Positions 436 through 41,285 of a stretch of 64,000 nucleotides of DNA are shown piece after piece. The notes below the pieces were generated by a model. It was not told the DNA's origin. It saw nothing but the letters and a program-made list of their open reading frames with translations, and made no database searches. Position 1 is the stretch's first letter. Each line of letters starts with the position of its first letter. A program made the position numbers and the translations under genes. The stretch spans positions 10,684,463 through 10,748,462 of the forward strand of contig OZ037770.1 in NCBI GenBank assembly GCA_964035545.1, in the 5' to 3' direction. The stretch comes from Bugula neritina (lineage: Eukaryota; Animalia; Bryozoa).

Positions 436-3400
436 ACAGGTCTGGAATCTTCATGGACCTATCCAAGTAGTTCTGGGTCTTTAGATTCTTCGACAGGATT
501 GAGTTCTTTTAACAACTGGATTGCTGTCAATGAAGACTCTCTGCCTTCTGATGCTGACCACTATATGCTCGTTACCAGGTGGATTATGTTAGCTTTCACT
601 GTGTACCTGCTTTTTTAAAAAAAGATGATTGGTTTTCTCAGAAGCTTTGATATTATTTAACTCACACAAGTTTATAGTCACTATCCTTGTGAGAAACCTC
701 TGGTGGAAAGGGTTTTTGTTAAAGCGGGCGAAGGACTTATTTAAATGAGGCACAGGAGCAATTATGACTGGATGCTCTTCCTAACATCACCAATGGCCTT
801 TGTCCGGGCTCGAACCCAGGACCTTGTGTTTACTAGGCAAACGCTCTAACCCCTAGACCATGGCTGCTCCTTTTTGATATTATTTAACATACATAATAAA
901 ATCTTATTGAATGATGAATTGTTTTATTTTTATGTTTCTCAAGTAGAGGAACATTAACAAAGTATTTTAACTTATTTGCAAAGGCTTGTATTTGTAGCCT
1001 CGATTTGACATCAGGTGGTTCATCTAGTAATGCAGGTCTAGCATTTGTGGGAGGAGTTTGTGGCAATTATCCTTCTTCAATTAATGAGTTCGGTGATACG
1101 ACTATCTTGGCTCACGAACTAGGACACAAGTAAGGTCAAAGCTAGGCTAAAGTTTAATTTTACATGGGCTAATAACTGATAGAACGAAAGTTTCAACGTC
1201 TATGTAGCATATTACTAAACCGAGTAAAAGAAATTATTTTTGAACAGTCATTTTAAGATTAAGCTGGTTAAGTAGATAAAGCATTATATTTTCTACCTTT
1301 CGGTTTTGCAGCCATTTGTAGCTTATATATCTTAAAGATTATATATATATATATATATATATATATATATATATATATATATATATATATATATATACAT
1401 ATATATATATATATATATATATATATATATATATATATATATATATATATATATATATATATATATATATATATATATATATATATATATATATATATAT
1501 ATATATATATATCTTTGAGCGAAACTTATTTTCGAAATCATATTTAATAAAACACTTTAATTTCAAACTCAGTGCATTTCAAATAATTAAACCGCTAACC
1601 TGTCTAACTTGATAGAATAAATTGTTGCTAAACAGAAACGCACATCCTTTAAGGTAGCTAATTGTTCATTTTCAGCTTGGATGCAGCTCATGATGGAACA
1701 GGAAACACCTGCTCAGCTAATGATCAGTTTGTTATGGCATCTTCAAGTTCCATTACTGACATAAATACTAGAGGCAATCCTTGGAAGTTTTCAATATGTT
1801 CTGTAGAGACATTTGATGCTTTTCTCACTGCACTCAACAAGTATGTTGTAAACGACTAAAGTAGTAGAATACTGTTAGCTACTCAATTGGATCATTTTGT
1901 AATCTGTATAAGACTCTCGTGTGTTTATAGTCATTACCCCTGCAAAAACCTCTGACGGAAATGGTTTTTTTAGCTACATAATAGCTTCTAATGTGAACAA
2001 TTATGGAACATTTATGACTGTATGCATTTTTTTACCACACTATTGACATTTACTGGTATTTGAGCCACTGACCTTGTGTTTACTAAGCTAGTGCTCTAAC
2101 TGCTAGGCTGATCTTTCTCCTTGCATTTTTTGTATTCTATTATATGTATAAAATTCAAGCTTACATTTCTTTTTAGTGATGGTAGCAACTGCTTAAGCAA
2201 TGACGGGTCATATATAGCATCATGGAGTGAGGACTACACTGGATATATAGGTCAAACTATCACAGTAGATGAACAGTGTAGACTAACGTTTGGTGATAAC
2301 TACTATTATTCTGTAAGTCTTATGTACTGTATCCAGCTACAAAAGTAGTTAGCATTTATAGAGCAGCTTTTTCTATGAAAAAGTCTATGGTTCAAATGCA
2401 AGAATTCTGTCAGAATATTTAAATGTGAAATTATTTTTACTGTATACATGCAATTGTGTAAATGCAACTGCTTTTAGGTTGATGATCTACACAATGAAAA
2501 TGTCATTTAACTTTTTATATTGCTGTGTATTCTGCTATCTAATCTACTTGTAATTAATAATTAGTTAGTTGATGCAACACTTTTAATACTTCGCCCAAAA
2601 GATAATATGTCAATTTAATTTAGATGATTATATTATTTTTAATTCAAGATGTATGGAGAATTATAAAATCCCCTGTATGCTTCTAAATGCCATGAGTAGA
2701 GTTTTACAGATTATGTATACCAAAAACTTACTTTTAGAAAATTGTTTTTAGACATCTTTTTTTTCTGACGTTTGCCACGTATTATGGTGCACAGAAAATG
2801 GTCTAAGTTCCTCTGCAAGAAGAGCCGCCCTTCCTTATACCACATGTGGGAATATGAAGGTAAATGTTATAATGGTATTTGTGATGGTGTGCGACAAGAT
2901 GGTGCTGTCTTGTAATATATTACATGTTGATTTATTTGATACAACTACTATGAATATAAAATGGTAATAACACTTTAGAATATAGCAACTAACTGACTGT
3001 TTAGCAATAACTACACAAGCGTTATATAGATGCTGACTATGACAATAATAAGGAAATGCACGATTCACATAGAAGTCATATATCTATTAATTATAGCTAA
3101 TAAGATGTGAACTCTATGTGACATTATAACAGTAAAGCAATCAAAATGGCATTGTGCATGCGGGAAATGAGGAGTTGATTTAACTTGAATAAAATCAAAG
3201 GAATAGTTGGGTGAATAAAATCCGGAGAGAAATTTTTTTTTGATAAAATTCAAATGCAAACTTCTTATGAATTTAGGAATGTGATAAAATAATTGTACTT
3301 TTCACACAAGTTTATAGTCACCATCCCTGTGCGAAACCCTTGATGAAACAAATTTTTAAAGGGAGCCAAGAACCTATTCATATGTGGCACAGGAGCATTT

Positions 3401-41285: not shown

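What the first reader, a model, noticed from the sequence alone, without database searches (positions are those of the whole stretch)
436..41285. Metalloprotease-tipped transmembrane mucin: an ADAMTS-like protease fused to a MUC4-like scaffold
Seen in the sequence: 45 phase-concordant exons link an M12B catalytic domain and Cys-rich domain, through a PTTTTT stalk of about 720 aa, to NIDO-NIDO-AMOP-VWD-EGF-SEA-like-mucin-TM. The protease-associated Cys modules and the mucin array share one exon (4042-6582). Established knowledge: MUC4, SUSD2 and Mesh-type proteins carry NIDO and/or AMOP with VWD but no protease, while ADAMTS proteases carry TSP1 repeats, which are absent here. Inference: a protease held at the distal tip of the glycocalyx and releasable by GDPH autocleavage and three furin-type sites, possibly for mucus turnover or surface defence. 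I do not recall this architecture being described, but cannot search to confirm.
Basis: partly seen in the sequence, partly recalled or inferred. Interest (0 to 1): 0.88.

Follow-up and report, generated by a model that had tools for sequence, protein, structure and literature searches.

The report
Bryozoan protease fused to MUC4-like mucin
In the bryozoan Bugula neritina, a copy of a MUC4-like membrane mucin gene was inserted in frame into the sugar-stalk exon of a metalloprotease gene, so one gene now appears to carry a protease at the tip of a MUC4-type surface mucin; this is a young, lineage-specific variant of a bryozoan family of mucin-stalked, membrane-tethered proteases for which I found no published description.

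Summary
Plus-strand exons encode an M12B (reprolysin/ADAMTS-type) catalytic domain, ADAMTS_CR_2 and two six-Cys modules. A 119-copy 18-nt PTTTTT array (4353-6481) lies in the same exon (4042-6582). NIDO x2, VWD with GDPH, C8-3_MUC4, calcium-binding EGFs, a second array, a TM segment and a short tail follow. AMOP and SEA got no profile support.

RNA contigs from three studies show the 6582/6825 splice, and one runs back into the array. Continuity from the protease exons through the array was not tested in RNA.

Paralog comparison shows the origin. A protease-mucin paralog on chromosome 3 is collinear up to 6340 and resumes at 46914. MUC4-like paralogs on chromosome 1 are collinear from 6449 to about 44 kb. 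So a block of about 40 kb was inserted at the end of the array. The old exon end (46681-47098) is now a frameshifted relic.

Both halves remain under purifying selection.

Relatives of the protease (a Bugula paralog, a Watersipora homolog) are already membrane-tethered, so this is an anchor swap, not a new principle.

The gene starts about 14.5 kb upstream of the window. The scan noted similar protease-on-mucin genes elsewhere in this genome (s1-466983, s1-481211).

The parts
436..600 (+). Protease exon, N-terminal part of the catalytic domain (core 445-588)
   Evidence: Open frame; 85% nt identity to the chromosome 3 paralog with no indels; aligns to the Watersipora homolog.
990..1129 (+). 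Catalytic exon ending in the HELGH zinc-binding motif
   Evidence: Reprolysin_3/4/2/5 hits; tblastn of P0010; the only GT-AG join that keeps the frame open is 1129/1676.
1676..1856 (+). Catalytic exon carrying the third zinc ligand (HD)
   Evidence: matches P0010, P0017 and P0022.
2124..2859 (+). ADAMTS_CR_2 Cys-rich domain, in two exons (cores 2124-2318 and 2752-2859)
   Evidence: Pfam PF17771 hits on both halves; tblastn of P0010 and P0011.
3620..3677 (+). Small exon before the array exon
   Evidence: tblastn of P0011, 89% identity; identical in the chromosome 3 paralog.
4042..6582 (+). One exon: two six-Cys modules (4042-4330) plus the PTTTTT array (4353-6481) plus the native end of the MUC4-like mucin exon (6449-6582)
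   Evidence: ORF 4002-6593; TRF; the module recurs in Reprolysin+ADAMTS_CR_2 proteins; donor 6582 seen in RNA.
6340..6449 (+). Left breakpoint interval of the insertion
   Evidence: Homology to the chromosome 3 protease paralog ends at 6340; homology to the chromosome 1 MUC4-like paralog starts at 6449.
6825..12006 (+). NIDO 1 in five exons: 6825-6946, 7690-7873, 8556-8662, 8978-9076, 11882-12006
   Evidence: Pfam NIDO; spliced RNA contigs in 3-4 runs; open joined frame.
13282..16547 (+). Second NIDO region (exon cores 13282-13484, 14196-14474, 15003-15182, 15519-15620, 16341-16547)
   Evidence: Pfam NIDO; conserved with the chromosome 5 paralog; loose RNA end joins 12006 to 13282.
16580..17818 (+). 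AMOP-like region, three exon cores with eight Cys (16580-16783, 16895-17080, 17693-17818)
   Evidence: Conserved with the chromosome 5 and chromosome 1 paralogs; no profile hit.
18101..19571 (+). VWD domain, with GDPH at 18113
   Evidence: Pfam VWD on the first and last exon; motif scan.
19640..19945 (+). C8-3_MUC4 domain
   Evidence: PF23263, 52.8 bits.
20045..32134 (+). Exons after C8-3 and the calcium-binding EGF run (cores 20045-20275, 20501-20614, 21141-21299, 29589-29813, 31006-31131, 31652-31912, 32000-32134)
   Evidence: Pfam EGF_CA, cEGF and FXa_inhibition; paralog conservation.
21312..29560 (+). Ty3/gypsy-type LTR retrotransposon lying in an intron; not part of the protein
   Evidence: Aspartyl protease, RT, RNase H and integrase hits; LTRs at 21312-21611 and 29143-29442, 98% alike; absent from the closest paralog; GC 50-56%.
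33110..35080 (+). Exon with a furin-type motif (33149), then the second PTTTTT array (33478-35055)
35278..40445 (+). Membrane-proximal modules: small Cys-rich exons (35278-35403, 37760-37867) and unassigned exons (35489-35635, 37180-37500, 38648-38737, 40248-40445), with furin-type motifs at 37204 and 40248
   Evidence: Open and conserved in two chromosome 1 paralogs; no Pfam family.
40858..41285 (+). TM segment (40858-40977), cytoplasmic tail (41088-41282) and stop
   Evidence: Hydrophobic run and conserved tail.
41286..44424 (+). 3' flank duplicated together with the MUC4-like gene
   Evidence: Collinear with chromosome 1 paralogs to 43707 and 44424.
46681..47098 (+). Relic of the protease gene's original exon end: T-rich piece, inverted array piece (46789-46913), then the tail with a frameshift and stops
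   Evidence: Homology to the chromosome 3 paralog resumes at 46914. The chromosome 3 copy reads in one frame to a GTAAGT donor; this copy needs two frames.

Best explanation
This is a real, young chimeric gene of Bugula neritina (chromosome 6 of tzBugNeri2.1).

The ancestor was a TSP1-less, ADAMTS-type M12B protease. It had a signal peptide, a prodomain with a furin site, a catalytic domain, ADAMTS_CR_2, two six-Cys modules, a long PTTTTT stalk and a membrane anchor.

After this gene was duplicated, a block of about 40 kb was inserted, in frame, at the 3' end of the PTTTTT array. The block was copied from a MUC4-like gene of the chromosome 1 tandem cluster. It runs from the last ~50 codons of that gene's own mucin exon to about 3 kb past its stop.

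The predicted product is a type I membrane glycoprotein of roughly 4,000 aa: a protease zymogen at the N-terminal tip, a stalk of about 700 aa that is presumably O-glycosylated, then NIDO-NIDO-(AMOP-like)-VWD-C8-EGF, a second stalk, and a TM segment.

Shown: the domain content, the single ORF, splicing of the array exon to NIDO in RNA, the insertion, the decay of the old 3' end, and purifying selection on both halves.

Inferred: that single transcripts run from the protease exons through the array; furin activation; GDPH autocleavage that would let the protease-bearing part be shed as in MUC4; and any role in remodelling the surface coat.
For: Domains by exon. Zinc motif restored by a unique GT-AG join.

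RNA. The joint 6581/6824 (GT..AG) is seen in runs X1, X4 and X9, from three studies. A 645-nt contig covers 6483-6581, 6824-6946, 7690-7870, 8553-8660 and 8976-9080 and runs on into array letters. The joined frame is open. The contig is of the chromosome 6 type: it has none of the indels that the closest paralog carries at 6483-6494.

Insertion. The chromosome 3 paralog is collinear from -19.9 kb to 6340 and again from 46914. The chromosome 1 paralogs are collinear over 6449-43707 and 19953-44424. There is an inverted array piece at 46789-46913. The relic tail is frameshifted, while the chromosome 3 copy runs in one frame to a consensus donor.

Direction of the event. In the Watersipora homolog the T-run is followed directly by the same short tail motif.

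Selection. dN/dS is 0.23 for the MUC4-like part and 0.31 for the protease part, with similar dS (0.24 and 0.27). On the chromosome 6 branch alone there are 30 synonymous and 18 non-synonymous changes, omega about 0.17. For the C-terminal exons omega is 0.35. The protease shows 14 amino-acid changes specific to this copy against 16 in the chromosome 3 copy, with Watersipora as outgroup.

Signal peptide. No Met lies in the array frame before 6498, and what follows is not a signal peptide. The Cys-rich extracellular part therefore needs the protease gene's signal peptide.

Assembly: HiFi at 132x.
Against: Short-read contigs cannot cross a 2.1-kb repeat.

No RNA-derived protein near-identical to the Cys module was found.

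All three plus-strand frames of the array are open, so its open frame alone is weak evidence; an in-frame join has a one-in-three chance.

One unspliced contig (6553-6880, run X1) would end the ORF just after 6593, so a short isoform is possible.

The RNA contigs differ from the window by 1-5%, so they come from another population or a cryptic species.

Some substitutions on the chromosome 6 branch may predate the fusion.
Confidence: 0.7

Rival explanations
1. Two transcription units. The protease-mucin message ends at or just after 6593 by intron retention, and the MUC4-like part is transcribed from a start inside or near the array. The fusion would then exist only as a gene model.
For: An unspliced contig spans 6553-6880. 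There is no RNA evidence across the array. No transcript-derived protein was found for the Cys module.
Against: A spliced contig starts upstream of 6483, within array letters. A product started from the array would lack a signal peptide. Yet its EGF, VWD and NIDO exons evolve under purifying selection on this branch. The closest paralog does not use such a start: its mucin exon is a 1,160-codon open frame with more sequence upstream.
Confidence: 0.15
2. The chimeric transcript exists, but one half is functionally dead. For example, the precursor might not be folded or secreted, or the protease might be inactive. The gene would then be a neutral by-product of a rearrangement.
For: The event is young (dS about 0.25). 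The protease part has the higher dN/dS (0.31). No expression data exist for the protease exons.
Against: The zinc motif, the furin site and all cysteines of the modules are kept. There is no rate excess against the chromosome 3 copy (14 versus 16). The exon cores checked show only in-frame (3- or 6-nt) indels and no stops, while the unused old exon end did decay.
Confidence: 0.12
3. Assembly artefact: PTTTTT arrays occur at many loci, and two of them were joined wrongly.
For: Arrays of the same 18-nt unit occur on chromosomes 1, 2, 3 and 7.
Against: Both sides of the block return to protease-gene sequence, with an inverted array fragment and a decayed tail. A simple mis-join would not give this. 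The assembly used HiFi reads at 132x, averaging about 9.7 kb (27.37 Gb in 2.82 million reads), against a 2.1-kb array. An RNA contig from another population carries this locus's version of the array end joined to NIDO.
Confidence: 0.03

Closest known systems
MUC4 (vertebrate transmembrane mucin) and MUC4-like proteins
   Same: An N-terminal PTS tandem-repeat stalk encoded in one large exon. NIDO. A Cys-rich region where AMOP sits. VWD with a GDPH motif. C8-3_MUC4. EGF modules. A single TM segment and a short tail.
   Different: A zymogen metalloprotease sits ahead of the stalk. There are two NIDO domains, at least five calcium-binding EGFs, a second PTS array and furin-type motifs near the membrane. 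AMOP is not recognised by Pfam at exon level. Cleavage at GDPH was not tested.
TSP1-less ADAMTS-type proteases (C. elegans MIG-17; proteins NCBI names mig-17-like or adt-1-like in molluscs, annelids and bryozoans)
   Same: Prodomain with a furin site, an M12B catalytic domain with an ADAMTS-type zinc motif, ADAMTS_CR_2, no TSP1 repeat, and C-terminal six-Cys modules. MIG-17 has a C-terminal PLAC domain that it needs for autocatalytic activation, as cited in PMC6215420.
   Different: The six-Cys modules here are not recognised as PLAC by Pfam. They are followed by a ~700-aa stalk and a MUC4-like body. That MIG-17 lacks TSP1 repeats is from my own knowledge.
Bugula neritina EB796_005837 (P0031, 859 aa) and Watersipora XP_067943399.1 (P0010, 755 aa)
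   Same: The same protease, ADAMTS_CR_2 and double six-Cys module. Both are type I membrane proteins. P0010 aligns collinearly with this gene's exons.
   Different: Their anchors are short. P0010 has a PTS stretch of about a dozen residues before its TM segment. P0031 has a SEA-like part, EGF and TM. Neither has NIDO, VWD or C8. NCBI lists them as an adt-1-like and a hypothetical protein, and I found no study of them.
ADAMTS7 and ADAMTS12
   Same: Metalloproteases of the ADAMTS family that carry a mucin domain, and PLAC (PMC4448532).
   Different: They are secreted. Their mucin domain lies between TSP1 repeats and carries chondroitin sulfate. They have no membrane anchor and no NIDO or VWD.

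Membership tests
M12B (reprolysin/adamalysin) metalloprotease | Zinc-binding motif HExxHxxxxxHD | tested here: met
   HELGH at the end of exon 990-1129 joins to the HD of exon 1676-1856 by the only frame-keeping GT-AG pair. The motif is conserved in the chromosome 3 paralog and in Watersipora. The residue where most M12B proteases have Gly is Asp.
M12B (reprolysin/adamalysin) metalloprotease | Profile match to the Reprolysin families above the curated cut-off | tested here: inconclusive
   By exon the scores are only 13.8-18.2 bits, below the cut-offs. The collinear homolog P0010 passes PF01421 with 33.5 bits against a cut-off of 20.8. No joined model was scanned.
ADAMTS family in the strict sense | At least one thrombospondin type 1 repeat after the disintegrin-like domain | tested here: not met
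   No exon piece gave a TSP_1 hit. A genome-wide PF00090 search found no hit within the locus among the 150 scored candidates.
ADAMTS family in the strict sense | ADAMTS cysteine-rich domain 2 (PF17771) | tested here: met
   The two exon halves score 19.2 and 21.0 bits on complementary parts of the profile. The paralog's ortholog P0011 scores 62.3 bits.
PLAC domain | Pfam PLAC profile match | tested here: not met
   No hit at E up to 1 on 4002-4340, and none listed for P0010 at E up to 0.001. The resemblance rests only on the six-Cys pattern.
MUC4-like membrane mucin | NIDO domain | tested here: met
   PF06119 at 36.0 bits (7579-7878), and 26.4 and 28.8 bits on later exons, against a cut-off of 25.
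MUC4-like membrane mucin | AMOP domain between NIDO and VWD | tested here: inconclusive
   No Pfam hit at E up to 10 on the three exons. Nothing from the Atlas, PDB or homolog searches. Eight Cys and the right position only; the domain is split over three exons.
MUC4-like membrane mucin | VWD with GDPH, followed by C8-3_MUC4 | tested here: met
   VWD scores 22.1 and 24.7 bits on its first and last exons (cut-off 22.9). C8-3_MUC4 scores 52.8 bits. GDPH is at 18113. Cleavage itself cannot be tested here.
MUC4-like membrane mucin | PTS tandem-repeat domain, EGF modules, one TM segment | tested here: met
   TRF arrays; EGF_CA hits; a hydrophobic stretch of about 25 residues at 40858-40977, conserved in paralogs. 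No TM predictor was available.
SEA domain | Pfam SEA profile match | tested here: not met
   No family found for 35462-35650, 37210-37527, 38498-38800 or 39933-40460.

The most novel reading that the evidence does not exclude
Bryozoans have a family of membrane-tethered, mucin-stalked ADAMTS-type proteases for which I found no description. Their anchor modules are exchanged by recombination at PTS arrays, which tolerate joins because every frame is open. This gene would be the member that acquired a MUC4-type body with a self-cleaving VWD. That would yield a surface protease that is displayed at the top of the glycocalyx and can be shed on demand.
Probability: 0.45. Interest if true: 0.72.

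Novelty: new variant of a known kind. Interest (0 to 1): 0.6.

Why it matters
Both halves belong to well-known families. I found their union in one polypeptide neither among 1.84 billion representative proteins nor in the literature search.

The locus also preserves the full record of how the fusion arose: the donor paralogs, the recipient paralog, both breakpoints and the discarded old exon end. That makes it a clear natural example of domain shuffling through a mucin repeat exon. It suggests that PTS arrays act as permissive linkers for building new surface proteins, and the same genome shows many other 'X-on-a-mucin' genes in the scan's notes.

If the protein is made as predicted, it offers a way to ask what a protease does when it is held some hundreds of nanometres above the membrane on a MUC4-type scaffold.

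It is a single-species, lineage-specific event, and its function is untested.

Tried and rejected
AMOP. Three Pfam scans of the exons, an ESM Atlas look-up, a PDB sequence search and a homolog search all came back empty.

PLAC and the fold of the six-Cys module. Pfam and the PDB sequence search gave nothing. I did not fold it.

Transcript-derived proteins for the Cys module. None was found. The second search returned only a paralog's gene model, P0031.

Other protease-MUC4 neighbourhoods in this genome. No protease exons lie within the fetched parts of the chromosome 1 and chromosome 5 MUC4-like loci. Genome-wide ADAMTS_CR_2, NIDO and Reprolysin hits showed no adjacent same-strand pair. I therefore could not locate the locus of note s1-481211.

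I replaced it with coordinate-only exon cores taken from tblastn against a divergent paralog. Two of those cores (13300-13484 and 18350-18650) turned out to be in the wrong frame. They inflate the pooled dN/dS slightly.

Exons were searched one by one, by reference. The only joining was a frame check inside a script over five RNA-supported exons.

Reading the chimeric state as ancestral, with a deletion on chromosome 3, was rejected. The Watersipora homolog has the tail motif directly after its T-run, and the chromosome 6 tail is frameshifted.
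Full report
IDENTITY OF THE SEQUENCE
The window is G000:C6:10684463-10748462 of a 216.0-Mb assembly. Assembly size and chromosome lengths match the Bugula neritina assembly tzBugNeri2.1 (GCA_964035545.1). That assembly was built from PacBio HiFi reads at 132x with Hi-C scaffolding (PMC11480708). The closest database protein to the Cys-rich exons is also from B. neritina.

WHAT IS IN THE SEQUENCE
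- Reprolysin, weak, at 918-1130.
- The two halves of ADAMTS_CR_2 at 2112-2345 and 2752-2964.
- NIDO twice.
- VWD on its first and last exons.
- C8-3_MUC4 (E 2.5e-14).
- Several EGF_CA/cEGF modules.

The zinc motif is restored by the only GT-AG pair that keeps the frame open, 1129/1676. One ORF, 4002-6593, holds two six-Cys modules and a PTTTTT array of 118.8 copies of an 18-nt unit at 4353-6481. A second array of the same unit lies at 33478-35055.

GDPH is at 18113. Furin-type motifs in coding frames are at 33149, 37204 and 40248. A hydrophobic segment at 40858-40977 and a conserved tail precede the stop.

AMOP and SEA got no profile support. No TSP1 repeat is present in the locus.

The gene begins outside the window:
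- A signal-peptide-like first exon lies at L004:5496, about 14.5 kb upstream.
- Four further upstream exons match the Watersipora homolog. They cover the prodomain, a furin site and the start of the catalytic domain.

RNA
Four runs from four studies, held as Logan contigs, were laid on 6480-12100.
- The joint 6581/6824 (GT..AG) appears in three runs.
- One 645-nt contig reads 6483-6581, 6824-6946, 7690-7870, 8553-8660 and 8976-9080, and continues upstream into array letters.
- Loose ends join 9076 to 11882 and 12006 to 13282.
- The joined exons read in one frame from the array into NIDO.
- The contig lacks the indels that the closest paralog has at 6483-6494. It is therefore this locus's transcript, from a population 1-5% divergent.

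HOW THE GENE AROSE
A paralog on chromosome 3 (C3:12.90-12.92 Mb) is collinear with this locus from -19.9 kb to window 6340. It then resumes at 46914-47577.

On chromosome 3, the array exon runs in one frame through a short tail to a consensus GTAAGT donor. It is followed by SEA-like, EGF and TM-coding exons. An independent draft assembly shows the same order.

MUC4-like genes form a tandem cluster on chromosome 1 (20.71-21.01 Mb), and there is one more on chromosome 5. The closest is collinear with window 6449-43707. A second is collinear with 19953-44424. The closest paralog's own N-terminal mucin exon has a different 20-residue repeat, but it ends like window 6500-6593.

It follows that a block of about 40 kb was inserted near the 3' end of the protease gene's array. 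The left breakpoint lies within 6340-6449. On the right side, after about 2.3 kb (44424-46681) that matches neither parent locus, come a T-rich piece, a 125-nt inverted array piece (46789-46913) and the old tail. The old tail now needs two frames and contains stops.

The Watersipora homolog has the same tail motif directly after its T-run, so the insertion is the derived state. The SEA/EGF/TM exons of the chromosome 3 copy are absent downstream of the relic.

IS THE CHIMERA IN USE?
- Pairwise dN/dS is 0.23 for the MUC4-like part against the chromosome 1 paralog. It is 0.31 for the protease part against the chromosome 3 paralog. The dS values are similar, 0.24 and 0.27.
- On this copy's own branch, the MUC4-like exons show 30 synonymous and 18 non-synonymous changes. 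Omega is about 0.17, the same as in its paralogs. The C-terminal exons give 0.35.
- With Watersipora as outgroup, the protease has 14 changes specific to this copy against 16 in the chromosome 3 copy.
- The old exon end decayed while the protease exons did not.
- The MUC4-like part has lost its own 5' end. No signal peptide can start within the array frame.

Together these argue that the protease exons supply the signal peptide and the MUC4-like part supplies the 3' end. This is inference, not observation.

WHAT THE FAMILY IS
A search of 1.84 billion representative proteins with the six-Cys module gave 25 hits. The longer annotated ones are Reprolysin + ADAMTS_CR_2 proteins of bryozoans, molluscs and a leech, which NCBI names adt-1-like or mig-17-like. 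Two others, of 1,341 and 1,511 aa, repeat the module 15 and 23 times with no protease domain. None has NIDO, VWD or C8.

The Watersipora homolog (755 aa) ends in a short PTS stretch, a TM segment and a tail. A Bugula gene model (859 aa) ends in SEA-like, EGF and TM parts. A membrane-tethered protease behind a mucin-type linker is therefore the family's ground plan. This gene swapped the anchor for a MUC4-type body.

ADAMTS7 and ADAMTS12 are the known ADAMTS members with a mucin domain, but they are secreted (PMC4448532). Paper searches for NIDO, AMOP and metalloprotease together, and for ADAMTS in bryozoans, found no description of this architecture.

EARLIER NOTES OF THE SCAN
Other first-stage notes in this genome describe a metalloprotease on a SEA/EGF mucin, which is probably the chromosome 3 paralog by its length. 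They also describe a second protease on a MUC4-type backbone, and bead proteins made of PLAC-like six-Cys modules. I partly tested the first and could not locate the second.

LIMITS
- Exon boundaries beyond 12006 are cores defined by conservation, not exact splice sites.
- The retrotransposon in the intron was only described.

VERDICT
This is a real locus and very probably a real chimeric gene. It is a new variant built from known kinds, with an unusually clear origin. Its function is untested.

Noticed in passing
window 21312-29560: A Ty3/gypsy-type LTR retrotransposon (aspartyl protease, RT, RNase H, integrase; long open frames; LTRs 98% alike; GC 50-56% against about 32% around it) sits in an intron between EGF exons. 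The closest paralog lacks it. A 77%-identical copy lies near the chromosome 3 protease paralog.
   Followed up: partly
window 9575-11420: A 1.85-kb insertion in the NIDO intron, absent from the closest paralog. RNA contigs cover it at far higher depth than the host exons. It carries a minus-strand ORF of 155 aa (10159-10626) with no Pfam family. About three other copies in the genome are about 90% identical, and they are interrupted by extra sequence at the position that corresponds to window ~10673.
   Followed up: partly
window 659-870: A SINE-like repeat of about 210 bp, with more than 40 genomic copies at 93-95% identity. Another copy lies at 3307-3436 and similar pieces elsewhere in the window.
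   Followed up: no
G000:C1:20.71-21.01 Mb (L010-L012, L016-L018): A tandem cluster of at least eight MUC4-like genes. Their N-terminal mucin exons carry different repeats: one has a 20-residue acidic repeat, and another has about 6 kb of PTTTTT. Identity between copies is mosaic, which suggests gene conversion.
   Followed up: partly
G000:C3:12.77-12.96 Mb and C3:10.91 Mb: About a dozen loci carry the same double six-Cys module, several of them next to PTTTTT arrays. This is a cluster of related protease-mucin genes. The copy at C3:10912290 is the closest to the window by module identity (82%).
   Followed up: no
L004:5840-6530 (upstream of the window): Tandem repeats of about 270 bp lie in intron 1 of the protease gene. 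I saw the repeats but did not test for ribozymes.
   Followed up: no
window 15893-16258: A repeat element that also occurs beside the chromosome 5 MUC4-like gene (about 85% identity in translation).
   Followed up: no
window 6480-12100 (RNA runs X1, X3, X4, X9): All four RNA runs share fixed differences from the reference, 1-5% in exons. At some of these sites they agree with the paralog's base. The public RNA data therefore seem to come from a different population or sibling type of B. neritina than the reference specimen.
   Followed up: partly
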